This document shows, piece after piece, positions 2,102-13,361 of a stretch of DNA of 64,000 bases. Both the position numbers and the translations under genes were made by a program. A model generated the notes under the pieces. It saw only the letters and a list, made by a program, of their open reading frames with translations, was not told the DNA's origin and ran no database searches. This DNA is from Dimorphilus gyrociliatus (Eukaryota > Animalia > Annelida): contig CAJFCJ010000012.1 of the NCBI GenBank assembly GCA_904063045.1, forward strand, positions 1,674,001-1,738,000, read 5' to 3'. The stretch's first letter is position 1, and each line of letters opens with the position of its first letter.

Positions 2102-5100
2102 ATGTCGAATATTTCCTATCAGATCGGAAACTTATTAGAGAAGGTGAGTGTCTTGCCTCGTATCTATCGAAGCTGTTTGAAAAAATCGAACCGTTTTTCT
2201 TGAACTTTTTTTAAGAAAGCTTTTCTTCTTACAAAAATGATTTTTAGATGATGTCCTCGGACAAGGACTATAGATTTATGGCAACGAATGACCTTATATC
2301 CGAACTGCAAAAAGATTCTATTAAACTAGATGACGACAGCGAAAGAAAAGTCGTTAAAATGGTGCTCAGATTACTCGAAGACAAAAATGGTGAAGTGCAG
2401 AACTTAGCCGTCAAATGGTATGTTTCAAATTTCATCAGCATAAAATAAAATGATTTGCTTTTTCAGTCTAGGGCCTTTGGTGAACAAAGTAAAAGACAAC
2501 CAAGTCGAAGTAATTGTAGATACACTATGCACTAATATGGTTTCCGACAAAGAACAATTGCGAGACATCTCAACCATAGGTAATAAATTTTAAATAAGAG
2601 AGTTCATATTCAAGATTATTAATTGTTTAGGAATGAAAACTGTGATAAGCGATATGCCTATCGGCTCATCCACTTTTGCAGCCACTATTTCTAGAAAAAT
2701 AACCGGAAAATTAACAACCGCTATATCTGTAAGGCGCAAATTTTTATAATATTTGATTGCAGCATAATAATTTACACTAAAATTTTATAGAAAGAAGACA
2801 TCTCTGTACAATTGGAAGCTCTTGATATTTTACATGATCTGCTCCATAAATTCGGTGGATTACTAACATCTTTCCATTCATCTATTCAACAAACTCTTGT
2901 CAATCAGTTAGATTCAAGCAGACTTGCAGTAAGAAAACGATCTATTAGCGCTCTAGGCAAGAAATTTTATTCTTGAAATAATTACTTAATATTTATGTTT
3001 ATAATTTACAGGACAACTTGTATTATGTTCTAGTTCAGCGCTGTTCAGTGAACTGATGGAATTCTTACTACAAAAGTTATGCAATGATACTCCAACAACT
3101 CGTACCTACATTCAGTGTGTTGGGGCAATAGCTAGACACGCAGGACATAAAGTCGGCAAGGTAAAATTGCTTAAAATTTATAATTCACGATAATCATTCT
3201 ATATTTTTAATATTATTATCACTATTAGTATTTGGATAAAATTATGCCTGCTGTTGTAAATTACTGTAAACAAGATGATGATGAAGTTCGCGAATTTTGT
3301 CTCCAAGCTTTTGAATCTTTTGTTATCCGTTGTCCTAAGGAAGTTACCCCACACATAAACCAAATTATTGACCTCTGTCTTAAATATATAACCTACGATC
3401 CAAATTATAATTATGATGACGATGATGAAAATGAAGACGAACACATGATGGACACTGACGAAGATATAGAAGAAGATGATGATGACTATAGTGATGACGA
3501 TGATATGAGCTGGAAAGTTAGGAGAGCTTCTGCTAAGTGTTTAGAAGCTGTTATCCGAACCAGACATGAAATGCTCGGACAACTGCATACAACTGTGTCT
3601 CCTGCTTTAATAGGAAGATTTAAAGGTTTAATTTTTTATCTTTTTGTTTGTCAATAATTTATATCTATCATATGAATTTTACAAACAGAGAGGGAAGATA
3701 ATGTTAAGGCGGACGTTTTTCATGCTTATATGTGCTTATTGAAACAAACTCGCCCAGCGACTGTTTCAGACCCAGATGCCATGGATCAAGACGGAAAGTA
3801 GGTATTTCACTTTAAGCTTATAAGTGTTTTTAATACCTCTTATTTCTTTTAAGCCCAATAAATGAACTTCAAGACCATCTTCCAAATCTCGTAAAGGCTG
3901 TTTATCGGCAATTTCGTCAAAAATCTATTAAGACAAGGCAATGTTGCTTCGCTTTGCTAACTGAATTGGTAACAGTTCTACCTGGCTGTTTGTCACCATA
4001 TATTCAAATGCTTATTCCTGGAATTCAATTTTCTCTTGGGTAAATTTTTTAATTACAAGTTTCATAAGTTCCACTATATACCGCTGCTTTACAGTGATAA
4101 GAACACGAGCTCGAATATGAAAATTGATACTCTCTCTTTTCTAAATTGCTTACTAGTCAATCATCAACCTTCTGACTTTCATCCACATATTGAAGTACTT
4201 GTTCCGGTTAGTTCATATTAAAAATATCTCTTATTCACCAAATAAATAATGCTAACATCTGTTCTCTAGTTGGTTATCGGATCCGTAGATGATGCATTTT
4301 ATAAAATAATATCAGAAGCATTGTTGGTTACACAACAACTGGTTAAAGTGATAAGACCACTTGGTGAACCAGTAAAATTCGATTATAAACCATACGTGGA
4401 CACTCTGTACAAGAGCACTTTAGCTCGTTTGGTTGCTGCTGATATAGATCAAGAGGTAAAGGAACGAGCTATTTCATGTATGGCACAGATAGTACATAGT
4501 CTTGGTGATGCTCTTGGAGCGCACTTCAAGCAATGCTTACCTATTTTCGTAGAACGCCTAAGAAATGAAATTACTAGACTAACAACTGTAAAAGGAGTAA
4601 CCCTTATTGCATCGTAAGAAATTTTGCTTTAAAAAGTTTAGCTCAGATTGAATACATAGAATACATAATATTTCTTCACAGATCTCCTTTGAAAATCGAC
4701 TTGAGCAAAGTTTTGGTTGGTATATCTAAGTGAAGCTATCTTTCATATATTCTTCATATTCATTTTAAACAAACAGAACGACATTTTACCTATCTTGGCA
4801 ACCTTTCTTAGAAAACATCACAGGGCTCTGAGACTGAGCACTCAACAATGTCTAGAAACAATTGTACGAAATTATGGGCATCTGTTTTCTGCCAATTTGC
4901 TTAACGACGTATTAAATGAACTACCGCCTTTAATTAGTGAAAGCGATTTACATATGTCCCAAATGACAATGACGTTACTAACAACAGTTAGTGAAATTAA
5001 CAAAACATTTTTAGATAAAATGGCAGCGAATATTTTGCCTCAAGTAATGCTCCTTATTAGATCTCCGTTACTGCAAGGTTCGAAATTTTTAACATTTTAC

Positions 5101-6851
5101 ATATTATAAACAATGTAATATTAATCTGTTTTATACTTGCAGGAGCTGCCCTTTATTCAGTATTGTCATTCTTACAAGGAATAGTTAAGGCTGAAGTCCA
5201 TAATTGTTCTTATAAAGAACTATTCACGGTTCGTTAAAATAATAATAATTCTCATTAGTCAACTAAATAACAACAAATTTAGCTTCTAATAAAACCGGTG
5301 GATGAAGCATCTGAAAAAGCTCGTGCACCAACCATATTACACAAACAAGCCCACCAATCCATATCCAAAGCAGTAGCAGCAATAACAGCTGCTTCACCAA
5401 AGAATATTTCACATACAGTTGATTATTGTATCGCTGAAATAAAAGTAACTTTATAGTTTTTTACCATTTTCCCTTGTTTTAAATTACGTTTTTTCTTTTT
5501 CAGTCGAGCAAAAGTGATATCAAAAAGCTTATAGTACTGCTTTCTCTTGGTGAATTGGGACGTTTGATTGATTTAAGCGGCGTTAAGGGCGTTCAAGATT
5601 TGATACTTGAATGCTTTTCTATAGGACACAGCGATGATATTAAGACGGCTGCAGCCTATTCATTAGGCTCAATGTGCGTTGGAAACTTACCAAAATTATT
5701 ACCTGGTGTCATTGAACTTATTGAAAAGCAACCCAAACGTCAATATTTACTGCTGCACTCCTTGAAAGAAATAATATCATTTCAGAGCGTTAATCCCGAA
5801 GCTGTTGATGCTCTAAGACCATTTGTCAAGTCTATCTGGCAAATGTTAATGAATCACGCTGAATGTGAAGAGGAAGGGACGAGAAATGTAGTTGCAGAGT
5901 GTTTGGGAAAATTAACTCTCATCGATCCATTGAATCTACTACCAGAACTAGAAAAATATTTAAAATCTAGCTCAGGATTAGTAAGAGCAACAGTTGTGAC
6001 AGCTATAAAGTTCACAATAACTGATCACGCTCAAAAAATTGATGGTCTGTTAAAAAAAAGCATCGGCGCCTTCCTGAATAGTTTATGCGATAAGGACTTG
6101 AATGTAAGAAGAGTAGCACTAGTTACCTTCAATTCTGCTGCTCATAACAAACCTGCTCTTATACGTGATCTCTTACCAAAAGTACTGTCCAGTTTGTATG
6201 ACGAGACAGTTGTTAAGAAGGAACTAATTAGAGAAGTTGAAATGGGACCCTTCAAACATACAGTTGATGATGGACTTGATGTTCGAAAAGCAGCTTTTGA
6301 ATGCATGTATACCCTACTAGATTCATGTTTGGATAGACTGGATATTTTTGAATTTCTGAAACATTTGGAAGATGGCTTAAATGATCATTATGATATTAAA
6401 ATGCTCAGCTATCTTATGCTTGTTCGGCTCTCGGTGTTATCACCTTCAGCGTTATTACAACGTGAGACTAATTTAGCAACATAGTTATATGAATAATTCA
6501 AATTTTCTATTTTATTTTAGATTTGGATCGTATTATTGAACCTCTAAAATCCACTTGTACTTTAAAGTTAAAACAAAATGCTGTGAAACAGGAACACGAG
6601 AAACAGGATGAATTGAGAAGATCAGCATTAAGAGCTGTTGCAGCAATACTGAAAATTCCAGATGCCGGTAACAATACTAAAAACATTAAATATCTATTAA
6701 AAACGCTGTAAAATTTTCAGATAAAAGTCAACAAATGACTGAATTTATGAATCAAATCAAAGCCAGTACTGAGCTTTTACAAATGTTTGAATTTGTCCAA
6801 AAAGATAGCACTCCTCCCGGTCAAGACCATACGTCAATGGATATTTACTAG
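2102..6851 (+). CDS. CAND1: Cullin-associated NEDD8-dissociated protein 1 (multi-exon, HEAT repeats)
   Basis: Exon 1 [14 protein letters not shown] (2102-2143) splices to [16 protein letters not shown]...[31 protein letters not shown]. Later exons include [16 protein letters not shown] and [31 protein letters not shown]. Stop TAG at 6849-6851 after ...SMDIY. Confidence 0.98.
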
Positions 6852-7795: not shown

Positions 7796-8895
7796 TTAAA
7801 CTTTAAAGTGTATCGCATCAAGTACGGCGTTCATATCGGCTTTCTTTTCTTTGACAAGATTGGTCAACCATTGATCATCATTTACAAATCCCATATTTTG
7901 AAGTTTCGAAACTATTTCGTTAACGCGTTTTTCTATTTATAAATAAAATAATAAAATTTAATAGTAAATTATTATTTTAATGACTTACCTTCTAAGGATT
8001 TCGACACAGCCTCTTGTATGTCATCATCAACCATGCACCAGTCTGCTGGATTCTTTTCTTCGGGTTTCTTTGTTTCTTGTTCTTTTGATTCTGATGCTGC
8101 TTCGGGGCAAGATGCAGTCTTCTCGCCAGAAACAGTTTCTCTTTTTCCATTATGATCAATATGGACTGCAACATCCACACCAAATGGATCTAGCATGGCG
8201 GAAACAGTCTCTCCAATAGTTTTTAAGTATATTTCCTCCTGTTTTCTTTCATCTTCAGTTGGGGCTTCATTTGAATTAGTAGCCCCCTCAGTTTTGGGGC
8301 CGCAATTTTCGGGACGTTGCTGACCAAATCGATTGAACCATCCATCCCACCATCCTCTTGGGCCACCTCTACCCTTGTGGCAACCGCGAGGTCCCCAACC
8401 GTGACGCTGAAATCCACCAGCAAAAGGAAACATACGTGGGAAACGGGTATGACTCGGATCGGTGATCCTGGCCATTACATGGTTAACATGAATATTCTTT
8501 TTTTCACACTTCCAACAAAGATCATAATCAGGACATTGTAGGCACTTATATCTGTACCCTACTACATCACCATCGCAACCATCACAAATAACACCTGGAT
8601 GTTTTTGTCCAGAAGGCTCTGAATTACTAGCTACATCTAACGAATCGGTAAGATATATCTTCAGTAAGTTTTTCGAGCCAGAAATAGCTTGACAGAGTTC
8701 TTCGCTGGTTGAGAAATTAATCACATCTCCTTCTTCGTCTTTCCAAGAGAAAATAATGGCGTCTTGGTTCAAACCTGGAAATATTGAAAATGCTTTTTTC
8801 TGTAAAATTCCAAACCCTCCAGCGGGATCAATTTCAAATCGACGAATTTCTTGACGATCTTTCAAAGTCAGGTAGGCTTTTACAGCAAGTGTCAT
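7796..8895 (-). CDS. SQSTM1: Sequestosome-1 / p62 (PB1-ZZ-LIR-UBA), 2 coding exons
   Basis: PB1 (LAVKAYL...EIRRF; WKDEEGD), ZZ finger (HPGVICDGCDGDVVGYRYKCLQCPDYDLC) and LIR-like DWCMV. A GTAAGT intron leads to the UBA exon EKRVNEIVSKLQNMGFVNDDQWLTNLVKEKKADMNAVLDAIHFKV*. Confidence 0.96.
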
Positions 8896-9213: not shown

Positions 9214-9888
9214 AGATATTTACTAGGACTAAATTTACCGGGAAATTTTCTTGAAACATCAAAAAGTAATTTTGGATCATTTATAAGACACAAGAGTATG
9301 GTTACCAATAGGATGAGACACTAAGATGACATACTGACCACAGACAAGTAAAAAAAATCGAAAAAAAATATGAGTGTTAAGGAGGGAACGGAATCTGGTT
9401 GAGACAATGTCAAATCGGGCAAGCTGTGAAATAAAAACTGAAACAAATAAGTTACCAAAAAAAACAATTAAAAATAGAAATTTTGATAATTTTTAAGCAA
9501 GTTTTAAATAAATTCATTAAAAGTTAACAAACCAATAAAAAAGGACTCAAATAAAGAAACAAATTAACAAACAAAAGTTGAAAGTCCTATATGGCTGATG
9601 TGTTCAATTGCCAGCGAGTCTTTTGAAAGTTTCTTGCCAAGAGACTATGCCAGTTTCTACTCAAACTGCTCCCATTTTTGCTTGTTTTGATTGTCGTTTC
9701 TTGAAGTTGAATCAAAACACCAAACAAGATTCAGCCAATATTACTTAAACGATGCTCACGATCAAGGAGGTCGATTAGACGGACGAATCGGCGCGGACTT
9801 GTGGGCGGAGCATATATTTAATTGCCAATCACTAATTAGTCGATTCGACGGCGTAAACGGTCAGTCTTCTTGACGATACGTCAGAAAG

Positions 9889-11578
9889 ATGGTTCCCTAT
9901 AATCGTCTACTTCTACTTTTATTCCTCGAAACTTTTAGAACGGCTCCCGTTCATAACAACGCTCAAGAAAATGTTGAAATTCTAATAAGCAAATTCGGTA
10001 TGAATATGGACGTCGCCAACAAATTTGTTTTAAACTTTTACAAGAGGTTAGAAAGTGGAAAATCTTTATCGAAGGCTTCAGGTCATCCAAGAATGGACAG
10101 ATCAATAAGCGGTGCTGATACTTTTCGGACGCTTCCCGTTGAAGGTAAAAAAAATTAACTAATTAGAATATTTAGACGTCTGTCAAGTTATTACTCATCT
10201 TTAAAATTAACGGATAATATTAAGCAGATATCGTCAATTAGCCACTCAGACTAATTTAGATTGGCCACTTTTTTTAAAAATCCTGATACAACAGTCTGCG
10301 TTGAGTAATTAGTACAAACATGATTTATCGGTGAGAGTAAAGTCTGAGTCGGCATATTCTATAATTCGTTAGTCTGGAGCAATTTCCCATTTGTTTTTCT
10401 CGCTTTTTTTCGACAAGCGATTGTAAAGGTCGGAAGTTTTAAATGACGTCGCATGCTGAGAAACATTTCCTCTTTTACGGTGTCGCGTGTAAATACACCA
10501 TTCGGTCTTTCATCTTACCTGTTTCTTCACACCTTTTTCTTTATTTCCGCTTATTAATGTCGTTTTTCATTTTAAACAGCTAAAGAATTAACAAGGAATT
10601 CCTTGAAGATAAGATTCAAAACGAATCTTGTACCCGGTGAGAAACTCATCTCAGCCGAATTAAGAATGAAGATCAAGGCTAATCCCGTTAAGTGGAGCGT
10701 TTATAGGGTTCAAGGAAATCTAGAGAGCAAATCGGATGGGGCAAAAGCAGTTTATGATTTGAAAACAAAACCTCTCTCATCCGACGGCAATGTTCTTTTA
10801 GACTTTACAAATATTCTAAATGGATTATTCGATACGTGGATATTTAAAGGAAATTCATCGAATGATCAACTTGTAAGCCTACTTGTTTATGGCTTTAAAA
10901 TTAAGATAAACAATATTTTTTCCCTTTATTTTCAGACTGTTAACTTCAATATTACAAATCGATTTAGTTCTCCAAAGAAAGTTGTTCAGAATGTATTTGA
11001 TATGGATAGTTTTATTTTAGTTATCTACACAAAAAGACCAAGTTTCGTAGACGAAATAAACAAGAATTTTCTATCAGTTTTACCAACTAAAAATCGACAA
11101 AAAAGAAGAGTTCGATCGAAAGATGTAATGAGTACTATTTAATATATTTTACTGTTTAAACTAATTCATACTCTCCTCTATCCACTTTTTCTTAGAAATC
11201 GCCTTGTAGTCTTAGAGATTTTGTTATCAAATATGAAGATTTAGGACCTCAGTTGGCGGATATTGTTTTTCCATATACGCATAATATTCGTATGTGCAGC
11301 GGCCATTGCCAAATTAAGTTTGTTGCTGGAGAAGAAGCAGAAGTTATGACTCCTAGAGCAAGATTACAAGTATGTTACATTTTTTTCTTCTACCTTGACC
11401 TTTCTTATTTTTTTTTGTCTTTTAGTTTCTTGCTTGGAAATTAGGAGTTTATAGAGGTCGCAAACCATGTTGCTCGCCTACCAAGTTGAAAAAAGCAGCT
11501 GTTATTAGGGCTGATTTTTCTCGAATGTGGTTACAAACTATTCCTGATTATGTTGCTACGGAATGCGGTTGTTCATAG
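9889..11578 (+). CDS. Divergent TGF-beta superfamily ligand, probably Nodal-like (5 exons)
   Basis: Signal peptide MVPYNRLLLLLFLETF, prodomain with LISAELR and a furin site RQKRRVR. The mature domain is KSPCSLRDFVIKYEDLGPQLADIVFPYTHNIRMCSGHCQIKFVAGEEAEVMTPRARLQ|FLAWKLGVYRGRKPCCSPTKLKKAAVIRADFSRMWLQTIPDYVATECGCS*, with the 7-Cys knot pattern (C, CxxxC, CC, CxC). TGF-beta membership is solid; the Nodal assignment is an inference. Confidence 0.9.
10174..10376. promoter_or_regulatory. Cluster of five CAGAC/GTCTG Smad-binding-element-like motifs in intron 1 of the TGF-beta ligand
   Basis: GTCTG at 10178, 10294, 10342 and 10372; CAGAC at 10247. The intron spans ~10145-10578 and is about 8 times longer than typical introns here. 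Confidence 0.45.
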
Positions 11579-11689
11579 CAGTTGATAAAATTAGAATCTT
11601 ATGAACAATAGAGGAGTGTGCTTATTTCTTATTGTCTATAAAGATGTTTGTTATTTATTTTTCAAATACAATTGGCGGGTTTGTTTACT

Positions 11690-11740
11690 ATACCGGAAGT
11701 AGTATATTGCTGATCACATGACTGGAATATGGCCGCCCCC
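11690..11740 (+). promoter_or_regulatory. AMDHD2 proximal promoter motifs (ETS, M-box/CLEAR-like, YY1-like)
   Basis: ACCGGAAGT (~11692), ATCACATGAC (~11713) and ATATGGCCGCC (~11727) lie 60-110 bp upstream of the ATG. Confidence 0.5.
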
Positions 11741-11800
11741 TAATTGAACAAAACGTAGAAAATTTTTAAGCTTTAAGGAAAATATACCAATTTAGACGAT

Positions 11801-13361
11801 ATGGCATTGGTTAAATTCACTAATTGTCGCCTTATTAGAAATGGTCAAATCGAATGCGATGACTTGTGGGTACGAAATGGAAAAATCATGAATCCAGAGA
11901 AGATTTTCTTTGAAGAAAAAGTAAAAGCTGATGTTTATATCGATTGTCATAACGTAATTATAGCACCTGGTTACATAGATGTCCAAATAAACGGTTCGTC
12001 CTCGCTTTTGGATGTAAATACGGTTATATAATAGTTGTATGCGCTCGTGTAGGGGCGTTCGGTATTGACTTTTCAACGGACGTTGACAGAGTTAACGAAG
12101 GCGTAATTAAAGTGGCTGGCGGAGTTTTAAGACACGGTGTAACTTCTTTTTGTCCAACAATAGTCACATCTCCCTCAGAAAGTTACAAAAAGGTGAAAGT
12201 AATCTGATTGTTTTTCATAATACCACTATAAACGTTCGACCAACATTCTAACAGATTATACCGAATATACGCCGCAAGGGAGGCTCAAAGTACGGAGCAG
12301 CTGTCTTGGGTATTCATATCGAGGGTCCTTTTATTAATAAAGAAAAGAAAGGTGCTCACTCCGAAGAATTAATAAGGAGTGACTTAAGCGGAGGATGGAG
12401 TTTACTAGAAGATATGTATGGGAGTCTAGAAAATGTCTCAATCTTCACTATAGCCCCTGAACTACCAGGTGCCCTCAACATTATAAAAGAGTTAAGAAAG
12501 AGAAATATTCGAGTATCGTTAGGTAAAAAAGAAGACTTAATATTTGCACATATTTCAAATGATATTCTCAAGTTTTTAATTAAAACAGGACATTCTATGG
12601 CTGATTTAAATAAAGGCATAGAGGCTATCGAACATGGTGCTAACTTTATTACTCACTTGTTCAACGCTATGCTACCAGTTCGTTAGCTTTATCTGTATCA
12701 GCCTTTGAAATAATTGTTTTTTTCTTAATCCTTAATTTTAGTTCCATCATCGTGATCCTCATCTTGTCGGTCTCCTGGCAACTGATCTTCCTCACACTGT
12801 CTATTACGGAATGATTACAGATGGAATCCATACTCACTCTTCTGCTATTAGAATTGCTCAAAAAACTCATCCTAAGGGACTTGTTATAGTTACTGATGCT
12901 ACTCCAGCTATGGGACTAGAGTGTGGCAAACATCATATTGGAACTTTAGAGGTTTGCACGCCTATTCTCGAAAAGAAGAAATTTCGAATAAATATTATTT
13001 TCCAGGTAGAAGTCAAGAAGGATGGAAGAGCTGTCATAGCGGGAACCCAGACTTTAGCAGGAAGGTAAAAACAACAAATTAATTTGAATAACATTTACTA
13101 GGATAACAGTGTCGTTTTTCTTTTATTAGTATAGCAACAATGGATGAATGCGTAAGACACTTAAGAAAAGCAACAAATTGCTCAATAGTAGAAGCAATTG
13201 AGTCGGCTAGTTTGCATCCTGCTCAGCTCTTGGGGATTGAAACTAAAGGCAGATTGAACGCCGGTTGCGATGCGGATTTCGTCTTTTTGGACGATAATTT
13301 ATTCCCGTTAAGCACGTGGATAGCGGGCGAGAAAGTATTTGATACTTCTACAGTTGAATAA
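11801..13361 (+). CDS. AMDHD2: N-acetylglucosamine-6-phosphate deacetylase (multi-exon)
   Basis: [63 protein letters not shown] and [10 protein letters not shown] motifs of the NagA amidohydrolase family. Confidence 0.97.

What the first reader, a model, noticed from the sequence alone, without database searches (positions are those of the whole stretch)
9889..11578. Cryptic, highly divergent TGF-beta ligand whose exon structure points to Nodal
Seen: five small exons assemble into signal peptide + prodomain + RQKRRVR + a 7-Cys knot. The ORF track shows only unrecognisable fragments. The ligand lacks the family-typical GWxxWI motif (it has LGPQLADIVFP) and the NHA helix (TPRARLQ). A phase-0 intron (11370-11425) falls right after ...GEEAEVMTPRARLQ, and the last exon is exactly 50 aa + stop with CC at positions 15-16. 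From recalled knowledge, human NODAL has an intron after ...GEEFHPTNHAYIQ and a 50-aa last exon with CC at 15-16. Inference: a fast-evolving Nodal orthologue that similarity searches could miss, relevant to left-right and axis patterning in spiralians. The altered finger/wrist surfaces may imply changed receptor or co-receptor usage.
Basis: partly seen in the sequence, partly recalled or inferred. Interest (0 to 1): 0.8.

Follow-up and report, generated by a model that had tools for sequence, protein, structure and literature searches.

The report
Divergent, probably Nodal-type worm growth factor
The tiny marine worm Dimorphilus gyrociliatus makes and conserves a very unusual TGF-beta signalling protein that is most likely its Nodal gene, but the intron match with human Nodal that prompted this idea is not good evidence for it.

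Summary
The five-exon gene is real. A 100%-identical spliced contig uses all four predicted GT..AG introns. A roughly 94%-identical relative uses the same four, with no indels and mostly synonymous changes. The 354-codon frame has a hydrophobic N-terminus, a prodomain, an RQKRRVR cleavage site and seven knot cysteines. Both finger-1 tryptophans and the NHA motif are missing.

The exon-structure argument fails. A teleost Nodal does have the phase-0 intron after NHAxxQ and a 50-aa last exon. Amphioxus, Ridgeia, Aplysia and about ten other spiralian Nodal genes do not. One BMP-like gene has that exact intron.

Other evidence still points to Nodal. The top 13 hits of exon 4 are all spiralian Nodals. 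A spiralian-Nodal profile scores 25.3 bits against 12.8 or less for non-Nodal groups, and 0 of 2000 shuffles reach this. Exon 1 best matches annelid Nodal exon 1. Finger-2 length, an aromatic residue before the conserved Pro, and MCS are Nodal states. However, ML trees and AU tests resolve nothing. Activin, AMH-like and named ADMP references could not be fetched.

Verdict: a real, divergent TGF-beta ligand, and probably (about 0.6) a fast-evolving Nodal orthologue.

The parts
9889..10144 (+). Exon 1. It holds the start codon, a hydrophobic N-terminus (probable signal peptide), the prodomain alpha-1 helix and the ADTFRTL motif. It ends in phase 1.
   Evidence: The joint 10144|10580 is seen in spliced contigs. 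The best local hits are exon 1 of the annelid-type Nodal L045 (19.7 bits, E 2.4e-4) and Ridgeia Nodal (17.7 bits).
10145..10579 (+). Intron 1, 435 nt, phase 1. It is much longer than the other three introns.
   Evidence: GT..AG, and skipped in the contigs of X4 and X1/X2. A low-depth contig (7.5 against 176) covers it, probably from unspliced RNA or DNA. The same position, phase and split-codon base G occur in L045, Ridgeia and amphioxus Nodal and in the BMP2/4-like L006. It holds 7 GTCT/AGAC sites against 2.75 expected, and no FoxH1 motif.
10580..10872 (+). Exon 2, prodomain arm (…KLISAELRMKIK…LLDFTNIL…).
   Evidence: Weak Pfam TGFb_propeptide match (12 bits, profile positions 111-147). Joints confirmed. 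Against the relative, the listed changed codons are 13 synonymous and 3 non-synonymous.
10873..10935 (+). Intron 2, 63 nt, phase 0. It is open in frame, which is why the ORF list reads straight through it.
   Evidence: Skipped in all spliced contigs. ORF 10603-11142 reads through it.
10936..11124 (+). Exon 3: the end of the prodomain (…ILVIYT…) and the dibasic cleavage site NRQKRRVR|SKD.
   Evidence: Read from the sequence. Joints confirmed. The site resembles SRQKRSSKKSLC of the annelid-type Nodal L045.
11125..11195 (+). Intron 3, 71 nt, phase 0. It lies between the cleavage site and the first knot cysteine.
   Evidence: GT..AG, skipped in the contigs.
11196..11369 (+). Exon 4: finger 1, the CSGHC knot motif and the pre-helix loop, ending in …TPRARLQ. 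It holds three of the seven cysteines. Both conserved Trp residues and NHA are missing.
   Evidence: Pfam TGF_beta 23.3 bits. The top 13 local phmmer hits are all spiralian Nodals. The spiralian-Nodal HMM scores 25.3 bits against 12.8 or less for non-Nodal groups. 0 of 2000 shuffles reach this.
11370..11425 (+). Intron 4, 56 nt, phase 0, directly after the Q that aligns with the Q of NHAxxQ.
   Evidence: The joint 11369|11426 is seen in the contigs. The alignment column is shown. The same position occurs in teleost Nodal L085 and in the BMP-like L102. It is absent from invertebrate Nodals.
11426..11578 (+). Exon 5: 50 codons plus stop. It holds the rest of the wrist, CC at positions 15-16, finger 2 and the C-terminal ECGCS.
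   Evidence: Pfam TGF_beta 30.2 bits. Best PDB match is AMH at 26.5 bits, then BMP6 at 21.3. Best local match is the last exon of teleost Nodal at 25.6 bits. Finger-2 length is 30, as in 32 of 32 Nodals and 1 of 51 non-Nodal rows.

Best explanation
This is an expressed, selectively maintained gene for a secreted TGF-beta-superfamily pro-protein of Dimorphilus gyrociliatus. It is most likely the worm's strongly diverged Nodal orthologue.

Shown here: the five-exon mRNA; the open 354-codon frame; the TGF-beta cystine-knot domain split over the last two exons; conservation of the frame and of all splice sites in a related organism; and a specific resemblance of exon 1 and exon 4 to annelid Nodals.

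Inferred from what is established for the family: the precursor enters the secretory pathway. It is cut by a furin-type convertase at RQKR/RRVR, leaving a mature peptide of about 108-111 aa. That peptide folds as a cystine knot and dimerises through the fourth cysteine. If it is Nodal, it signals through activin-type II and ALK4/7-type I receptors to Smad2/3.

Finger 1 has lost both tryptophans, and the pre-helix NHA is replaced by PRA. These conserved residues sit in the wrist and core region, so contact with the type I receptor or co-receptor is probably altered or weakened. This last point is inference only.
For: - **Transcription and splicing:**
- **Domain:**
- **Purifying selection:** 26 synonymous against 11 non-synonymous changed codons among those listed, no indels, and the non-synonymous changes lie mostly in exon 1.
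- **Exon 4 hits:** the top 13 of 4536 local sequences are all members of the spiralian Nodal family. That family is defined by its named members: Aplysia 'nodal homolog', amphioxus Nodal and vertebrate NODAL.
- **Per-exon subfamily HMMs:** exon 4 scores 25.3 (spiralian Nodal), 14.7 (deuterostome Nodal) and 12.8 or less (seven non-Nodal groups). The two-exon sum is 47.5 against 35.4 for the best non-Nodal group.
- **Shuffle control:** shuffles that keep composition and the invariant residues give 0 of 2000 at the real score or the real margin.
- **PDB:** no chain of any human subfamily reaches E 10 with exon 4.
- **Exon 1:** it best matches exon 1 of the annelid-type Nodal L045 and of Ridgeia Nodal, including ASGH and ADT(F/V)RT(L/F).
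- **Discrete states:** finger-2 length is 30 (32/32 Nodals, 1/51 others). The residue before the conserved Pro is F (aromatic or His in 30/32 Nodals; A, S or T in 51/51 others). MC[ASTV] occurs only in spiralian Nodals (8/19), and the worm has MCS.
- **ESM Atlas:** the nearest cluster to exon 5 is 'Squint (Fragment)', 50 aa (a lead only).
Against: - **ML trees give no supported placement.** The end branches are saturated (10 and 3.75-5.7 changes per column). With two Trp-less arthropod ligands in the set, both pieces join them. Without those, exon 4 sits by annelid Nodals while exon 5 sits with a BMP3-like group at 10/67 support.
- **AU tests reject neither side:** p 0.42 for the Nodal side and p 0.48 for the BMP side.
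- **Exon 5 carries no subfamily signal.** Its best single match is human AMH.
- **The reference panel is incomplete.** It holds only ligands that keep the WIxxP…CxGxC…NHA motifs, plus Nodals. No invertebrate activin, myostatin, AMH-like, maverick or named ADMP sequence could be fetched.
- **Gene structure differs.** Spiralian Nodals examined have two exons where the whole gene is in hand (Ridgeia), and none of them has an intron in the mature domain, against five exons here.
- **The rest of the genome could not be searched** for a canonical Nodal.
Confidence: 0.6

Rival explanations
1. It is an orphan, lineage-specific TGF-beta ligand of Dinophilidae. It descends from a BMP-type or unresolved ancestor by duplication and rapid divergence, and the Nodal-like states are convergent or chance.
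For: Trees and AU tests do not prefer Nodal. The exon 5 profile scores are flat, with BMP5-8 highest at 26.3 bits. The five-exon structure is unlike the spiralian Nodals examined. The genome paper reports a reduced TGF-beta ligand set in Dinophilidae, but its text names no ligand, so the published assignment of this gene is unknown to me.
Against: Exon 4 and exon 1 independently pick annelid Nodals. Three discrete characters have the Nodal state, and those states are rare or absent in 51 BMP-side rows.
Confidence: 0.2
2. It is an AMH-like ligand. Invertebrate AMH-like genes are reported in scallops.
For: The best PDB match of exon 5 is human AMH: 26.5 bits, with VATECGC identical and no gap across finger 2. 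From my recall of the human sequence, AMH also lacks the two finger-1 tryptophans and the NHA motif. The scallop survey reports AMH-like genes in lophotrochozoans.
Against: Exon 4 does not reach E 10 against AMH or any other PDB chain, whereas annelid Nodals score 15-22 bits. No Pfam AMH_N hit appears in the prodomain exons. Exon 1 matches Nodal exon 1. The teleost Nodal last exon scores about the same as AMH (25.6 bits).
Confidence: 0.08
3. It belongs, with the arthropod ligands P0151 (Folsomia) and P0152 (Nilaparvata), to a separate and old group of TGF-beta ligands that lack the finger-1 tryptophans.
For: Both exon pieces independently join these two proteins in a set of four with 99/98 support. 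All of them lack the two Trp residues.
Against: All four are the longest branches of the tree, which is the classic setting for long-branch attraction, and the tool itself warns about such joins. The arthropod proteins start the knot with CC (an activin/TGF-beta-type extra cysteine) and have a much longer finger 2. Their HMM preferences are for BMP-side groups, not Nodal. Their pairwise scores with the worm exons (11.5 and 18.1 bits) are below those of Nodals.
Confidence: 0.05
4. It is an ADMP orthologue. ADMP-like genes have five exons in scallops.
For: The scallop paper reports five exons for ADMP-like genes and two or three for NODAL-like genes. The worm gene has five.
Against: No named ADMP could be fetched. 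The unnamed sister cluster of BMP2/4-like loci, which might be ADMP, scores lowest but one with exon 4 (6.3 bits). Its first intron lies two codons away from the worm's, and it has no intron after NHAxxQ.
Confidence: 0.04

Closest known systems
Spiralian (annelid and mollusc) Nodal: Ridgeia piscesae NP493_35g04047 (P0138), Aplysia 'nodal homolog' (P0140), metagenomic annelid-type Nodal L045/P0123
   Same: - Seven-cysteine knot and a short N-terminal extension after an RQKR-type site.
- IV(Y/F)P in finger 1 and MC(S/A)GxC.
- Finger 2 of 30 residues.
- A prodomain alpha-1 helix with the ASGH and ADT(V/F)R(T/S)(F/L) motifs.
- A phase-1 first intron at the identical codon.
- They are the best pairwise and profile matches of exons 1 and 4.
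   Different: - The worm protein lacks GWGxW and PTNHA.
- It has one extra residue in finger 1 and three in the pre-helix loop.
- It is only about 33% identical in finger 1.
- It carries three extra introns, two in the prodomain and one in the mature domain.
Vertebrate Nodal (teleost nodal-related 2 / squint, L085 and P0004)
   Same: - A phase-0 intron directly after the Q of NHAxxQ.
- A last exon of exactly 50 codons with CC at positions 15-16.
- The same finger-2 length.
- The last exon is the best local match of exon 5 (25.6 bits).
   Different: Amphioxus and spiralian Nodals lack this intron, so the shared position is more likely parallel gain, or retention with repeated loss, than a family mark. 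Finger 1 is far less similar than to annelid Nodals (14.7 against 25.3 bits).
Anti-Muellerian hormone (PDB 7l0j)
   Same: It is the best solved-structure match of exon 5, with an identical VATECGC and a gap-free finger 2. By my recall, human AMH also lacks the finger-1 tryptophans.
   Different: Exon 4 shows no detectable similarity to it. There is no AMH_N prodomain. By my recall, human AMH encodes its mature domain in one exon.
BMP5-8 / BMP2/4-type ligands
   Same: The overall fold signature is shared. The first intron is shared with the BMP2/4-like locus L006. Exon 5 scores 21-26 bits against their profiles.
   Different: They have WI(I/V)AP with Ala before Pro, a finger 2 of 31 residues and YCxGEC. 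Their exon 4 profile scores are only 6-9 bits.

Membership tests
TGF-beta superfamily ligand (Pfam PF00019) | Cystine-knot growth-factor domain that matches the family profile | tested here: met
   Exon 4 scores 23.3 bits on profile positions 2-38, and exon 5 scores 30.2 bits on positions 66-104. Each half alone is near the cut-off of 27, and their sum is about 53. The middle of the profile (the wrist helix) is not matched.
TGF-beta superfamily ligand (Pfam PF00019) | Seven cysteines with C-x-G-x-C and C-x-C at the C-terminus | tested here: met
   Read from the sequence: C…CSGHC…CC…CGCS. The alignment columns coincide with the cysteines of 85 reference ligands.
TGF-beta superfamily ligand (Pfam PF00019) | Precursor with a signal peptide, a prodomain and a dibasic convertase site before the mature domain | tested here: met
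   There is a hydrophobic N-terminus and a weak TGFb_propeptide hit. Exon 1 has prodomain helix and ADTFRTL motifs like those of Nodals. RQKRRVR lies 6-9 residues before the first knot cysteine. Actual cleavage was not tested.
TGF-beta superfamily ligand (Pfam PF00019) | The two finger-1 tryptophans (GWxxW), conserved in nearly all members | tested here: not met
   The worm has LGPQLAD in place of GWxxW. Of the 85 reference rows, all but three have Trp in both columns: L007 keeps one, and P0151 and P0152 have none.
Nodal subfamily | Groups with named Nodals in a phylogeny, with support | tested here: inconclusive
   The ML trees have saturated branches. AU gives p 0.42 when both pieces are held with Nodals and p 0.48 when both are held with the BMP side. 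The two exons were placed as separate rows, and the panel lacks several subfamilies.
Nodal subfamily | Closer to Nodal profiles than to profiles of other subfamilies | tested here: met
   Exon 4 scores 25.3 bits (spiralian Nodal) against 12.8 or less for non-Nodal groups. The two-exon sum is 47.5 against 35.4. 0 of 2000 shuffles reach the margin. This holds only for the subfamilies in the panel plus the PDB.
Nodal subfamily | Nodal-type finger 2, one residue shorter than in BMPs, and a non-small residue before the conserved Pro of finger 1 | tested here: met
   Finger-2 length is 30 in 32/32 Nodals and 1/51 others, and the worm has 30. The residue before Pro is Y, F or H in 30/32 Nodals and A, S or T in 51/51 others, and the worm has F.
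Nodal subfamily | Conserved motifs GWGxWI(I/V)(Y/F)PK(R)(F/Y)NA and PTNHA(x)(M/I)Q | tested here: not met
   Only IVFP, N, T..A..Q and the cysteines remain. GWGxW and NHA are gone.
   It is present in the worm gene and in teleost Nodal L085. It is absent in amphioxus, Ridgeia, Aplysia and L045, and in the contiguous ORFs of about ten spiralian Nodals. It is present in the BMP-like L102. It therefore does not define the family.
Nodal subfamily | Signals through activin-type receptors to Smad2/3; right- or left-sided or organiser expression together with Pitx | not testable with these tools
   No expression map or signalling assay is available.
Nodal subfamily | It is the only Nodal-like gene of the genome (one-to-one orthology) | not tested
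   Only this 64-kb window could be read.
AMH | AMH_N prodomain and similarity across the whole mature domain | tested here: not met
   No AMH_N hit. Exon 5 matches AMH at 26.5 bits, but exon 4 gives no match at E 10 or better.

The most novel reading that the evidence does not exclude
The Nodal of a miniaturised annelid has lost both finger-1 tryptophans and the NHA motif, residues that are almost invariant across the superfamily, yet it stays expressed and under purifying selection. It therefore signals through an altered receptor or co-receptor interface, or acts as a non-canonical partner or antagonist. Its mature-domain intron is an ancestral bilaterian Nodal intron that is otherwise kept only in vertebrates.
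Probability: 0.2. Interest if true: 0.6.

Novelty: new member of a known kind. Interest (0 to 1): 0.42.

Why it matters
[quoted passage not shown] The Dimorphilus genome paper reports a reduced TGF-beta ligand set but names no ligands in its text (PMC7854359). If this gene is the worm's Nodal, it is a natural experiment. It would be a ligand that has replaced residues thought essential for the fold and the type I receptor site, while still being kept by selection. That makes receptor use, and the role of Nodal in a tiny, outwardly symmetric spiralian, directly testable. The work also gives a caution of wider use. The vertebrate Nodal intron in the mature domain is not shared by amphioxus, annelid or mollusc Nodals, so it cannot be used to recognise Nodal genes.

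Tried and rejected
**Searches that started from the gene itself found nothing**
- phmmer of exon 5 against 1.84 billion representatives gave only two spurious repeat proteins.
- The word-indexed search with exon 5 found no candidate.
- The ESM Atlas had nothing for exon 4.
- So neither the worm protein nor close orthologues could be obtained by reference.

**Length limits.** The longest stop-free reference in the gene is 188 aa. That is too short for the length window needed to reach the 354-aa product or the roughly 340-aa partial product of the relative.

**Reference panel.** I fetched it indirectly, with a degenerate DNA pattern on metagenome contigs. That pattern cannot return ligands lacking WIxxP or NHA, so activin, TGF-beta, AMH-like and similar groups are missing. 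Cluster names other than Nodal are my own labels.

**Trees.** Trees with the two exons as separate rows, and three AU tests, were uninformative. In one search the quick search was poor: the constrained tree scored higher than the free one.

**Microsynteny.** None was found between the window's neighbours (CAND1-like, sequestosome-like, AMDHD2-like) and the short Nodal loci of L045, Ridgeia, Aplysia and amphioxus. These loci are too short for this to count as evidence.

**Annotation check.** Looking up the upstream ORF, to see whether the gene is annotated in public records, found nothing.

**Prodomain and literature**
- PDB searches with exon 1 and with exons 2-3 gave nothing relevant.
- Literature searches found no statement on Nodal in Dimorphilus.

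**Rejected points**
- My own recollection that BMP5-8 share the exact intron. In the vertebrate-type locus L068 it lies two codons further on.

**Left out under the operators' rule.** I did not build, search or fold the joined protein.
Full report
**1. What is in the sequence**

The stretch 9889-11578 holds five exons: 9889-10144, 10580-10872, 10936-11124, 11196-11369 and 11426-11578. They add up to 1065 nt, or 354 codons plus a stop. The introns are 435, 63, 71 and 56 nt, all GT..AG, in phases 1, 0, 0, 0. The mechanical ORF list shows only fragments. One of them (10603-11142) reads through the in-frame intron 2.

Pfam finds the TGF_beta domain twice and independently. Exon 4 scores 23.3 bits (E 1.2e-4, profile positions 2-38). 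Exon 5 scores 30.2 bits (E 7.9e-7, positions 66-104). There is also a faint TGFb_propeptide match in exon 2.

Read directly, the product has:
- a hydrophobic N-terminus;
- a prodomain;
- the site NRQKRRVR|SKD;
- a seven-cysteine domain, C-x29-CSGHC-x34-CC-x30-CGCS.

LGPQLADIVFP stands where other ligands have GWxxWI(I/V)xP. TPRARLQ stands where they have TNHAxxQ.

**2. Is it a real, working gene?**

Earlier notes of this scan name the genome as Dimorphilus gyrociliatus.

Laying public runs on 9700-11700 gave the following:
- Run X4 has a 1906-nt contig, identical to the window, that skips exactly the four predicted introns.
- Runs X1 and X2, from another coded organism, have a 1132-nt contig that skips the same four. 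It differs at 72 letters (about 94% identity) and has no insertion or deletion.
- A coral metatranscriptome (X3) holds a 167-nt piece of exon 2.

The kinds of X1, X2 and X4 are guesses or not on record, but contigs that lack all the introns are spliced RNA.

Of the 37 changed codons that the table lists, 26 are synonymous and 11 are not. Six of the 11 lie in exon 1, and the five listed for exon 4 are all synonymous.

**3. The exon-structure argument**

A degenerate DNA pattern (W-I-[IV]-x-P … CxGxC … NHA) fetched 118 TGF-beta ligand loci from metagenome contigs.

One of them, L085, is a teleost nodal-related 2 gene: its relatives in the protein collection carry that name. It has GTGAGT directly after NHAYMQ. 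After 713 nt comes a last exon of exactly 50 codons with CC at positions 15-16.

It is not a Nodal mark, for two reasons. First, invertebrate Nodals lack the intron:
- Amphioxus Nodal (P0142, locus L121) has four exons, and its last exon covers residues 211-462.
- Ridgeia Nodal (P0138, L119) has two exons.
- Aplysia nodal (P0140, L120) has residues 35-343 in one exon.
- The annelid-type locus L045 is uninterrupted through the mature domain.
- About ten further spiralian Nodal proteins, called as single ORFs on assembled DNA, are uninterrupted too.

Second, the position is not unique to Nodal. L102 scores as BMP-like (48 bits against 38 for Nodal), yet it has a donor directly after NHAYLQ. A vertebrate BMP5-8-type gene (L068) has a phase-0 intron two codons later, and L016 has one two codons earlier.

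The region is thus either an old, sliding intron site or a hot spot. For the worm, the simplest readings are parallel gain, or retention with several losses elsewhere. I cannot tell which.

The first intron is phase 1, three residues after A-D/N-T-V/F-R-S/T-F/L, with G as the split base. It is identical in the worm gene, L045, Ridgeia and amphioxus Nodal, but also in the BMP2/4-like L006. It is old and does not discriminate between subfamilies.

**4. What the sequence itself says**

Searches from the gene found no close relative anywhere. The worm's own product does not appear to be in the protein collections.

I compared each exon, by reference and separately, with two local sets:
- a small set of 56 mature domains: 53 non-redundant domains from the loci plus three fish Nodals;
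- a large set of 4536 sequences: all six-frame ORFs of the loci plus every protein fetched.

For the alignments, trees and subfamily profiles, the reference rows were the 53 locus domains plus 32 fetched proteins, most of them members of the Nodal family found. Named members of that family are Aplysia 'nodal homolog', amphioxus Nodal and vertebrate NODAL. The nearest named annelid member is a Ridgeia protein.

*Exon 4.*
- In the large set, the 13 best hits are all spiralian Nodals, at 20.4 down to 11.8 bits.
- In the small set, L045 leads with 22.2 bits and the best non-Nodal reaches 12.2.
- No PDB chain of any human subfamily reaches E 10.
- Subfamily profiles give 25.3 bits for spiralian Nodal, 14.7 for deuterostome Nodal and 6.3-12.8 for seven other groups.
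- I then shuffled the 51 residues that are not family-wide invariants. None of 2000 shuffles reached the real score (their maximum was 19.9) or the real margin of 12.5 bits (their maximum was 9.2).

*Exon 1.* It best matches exon 1 of L045 (19.7 bits, E 2.4e-4) and Ridgeia Nodal (17.7 bits), sharing F(L/V)L.(L/F)Y..L..G.SL..ASGH…ADT(V/F)RT(F/L). The local set holds few BMP first exons, so this comparison is weaker than it looks.

*Exon 5.* It carries only family-wide signal. Profile scores run from 16 to 26 bits, with BMP5-8 highest. The best single matches are human AMH (26.5 bits) and the teleost Nodal last exon (25.6 bits).

*Three discrete characters have the Nodal state*:

| Character | Nodals | Non-Nodal rows | Worm |
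|---|---|---|---|
| Finger 2 of 30 residues | 32 of 32 | 1 of 51 | 30 |
| Residue before the conserved Pro | Y, F or H in 30 of 32 | A, S or T in 51 of 51 | F |
| MC[ASTV] at the second knot cysteine | 8 of 19 spiralian Nodals | none | MCS |

**5. What the trees say**

Nothing useful. The two exon pieces were entered as separate rows.
- With two Trp-less arthropod ligands (P0151, P0152) in the set, both pieces join them, on branches of 10 and 3.75 changes per column. This has the look of long-branch attraction. Those proteins begin the knot with CC, have a longer finger 2, and prefer BMP-side profiles.
- Without them, exon 4 attaches to annelid Nodals and exon 5 attaches to a BMP3-like group at 10/67 support.
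- AU tests reject neither holding both pieces with the Nodals (p 0.42) nor holding them with the BMP side (p 0.48). The test on exon 4 alone was equally powerless.

**6. Verdict**

The gene is a real TGF-beta-superfamily ligand. I put a divergent Nodal orthologue at about 0.6. The rivals are:
- a lineage-specific ligand of other origin, 0.2;
- AMH-like, 0.08;
- a Trp-less group shared with arthropods, 0.05;
- ADMP, 0.04.

The main gaps are a reference panel without activin, AMH-like or named ADMP sequences, no access to the rest of the genome, and no dinophilid orthologues to break the long branch.

The mechanism (secretion, furin cleavage, disulphide-linked dimer, Smad2/3 signalling) is inferred from the family and was not tested. 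Loss of both tryptophans and of NHA suggests a changed type I receptor or co-receptor surface.

**7. What is already known**

The genome paper states that Dinophilidae have a limited TGF-beta ligand repertoire, and it shows a ligand tree (PMC7854359, Extended Data Fig. 5i and Supplementary Fig. 6). The held text names no ligand. The authors may therefore already have this gene under some name. The scallop survey gives two or three exons for NODAL-like genes and five for ADMP-like genes (PMC10763453).

Noticed in passing
window 10145-10579: Intron 1 is 435 nt, against 56-71 nt for the other three introns. It holds 7 GTCT/AGAC sites against 2.75 expected from shuffles (p about 0.02), at 16 per kb against 6 per kb in the whole window. 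It holds no FoxH1-type motif and no palindromic Smad element. This is weak support at best for the separate 'Smad-element cluster' note.
   Followed up: partly
window 9533-9888 and 11579-12063: The X4 contig extends about 356 nt upstream of the ATG, across short upstream ORFs, and about 480 nt past the stop into the start of the next gene (an AMDHD2-like ORF from 11801). This could reflect long UTRs, read-through, or two transcripts joined in assembly.
   Followed up: no
window 3232-6484 (+), 7972-8895 (-), 11801-13361 (+): By eye, the neighbours look like CAND1 (HEAT repeats), a sequestosome/p62-like protein (PB1 plus ZZ zinc finger) and N-acetylglucosamine-6-phosphate deacetylase. None of them has a counterpart in the short Nodal loci of other animals.
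   Followed up: partly
L102:504-698 (-): This is an unidentified BMP-like ligand gene on a metagenome contig. It has a donor directly after NHAYLQ, the same intron position as vertebrate Nodal and the worm gene, and another intron inside finger 1.
   Followed up: partly
P0151 (Folsomia candida), P0152 (Nilaparvata lugens): These are arthropod TGF-beta ligands that public records name 'bone morphogenetic protein 2' and 'protein DVR-1'. Both lack the two finger-1 tryptophans, start the knot with CC and have a long finger 2. The automatic names look unreliable.
   Followed up: no
L009, L011, L020, L026, L027, L035, L036, L082, L093: This is a tight group of ligands from metagenome contigs whose host animal I did not identify. 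They have SC or AC in place of CC (no inter-chain cysteine, as in Lefty, GDF9 and BMP15), a long wrist insert and a CGCL end. They sit on a 2.55-long branch in the tree.
   Followed up: no
L005, L052, L055, L066, L072, L075, L081, L099, L101, L113: In many invertebrate BMP5-8-like loci the reading frame opens exactly one codon before WIIAP. This suggests a conserved intron just before that motif and a last exon of about 86 codons.
   Followed up: no
run X3, window 10667-10833: A coral metatranscriptome holds a 167-nt contig identical to exon 2. The worm, or a near-identical strain, was probably present in that coral sample, and the gene was expressed there.
   Followed up: no
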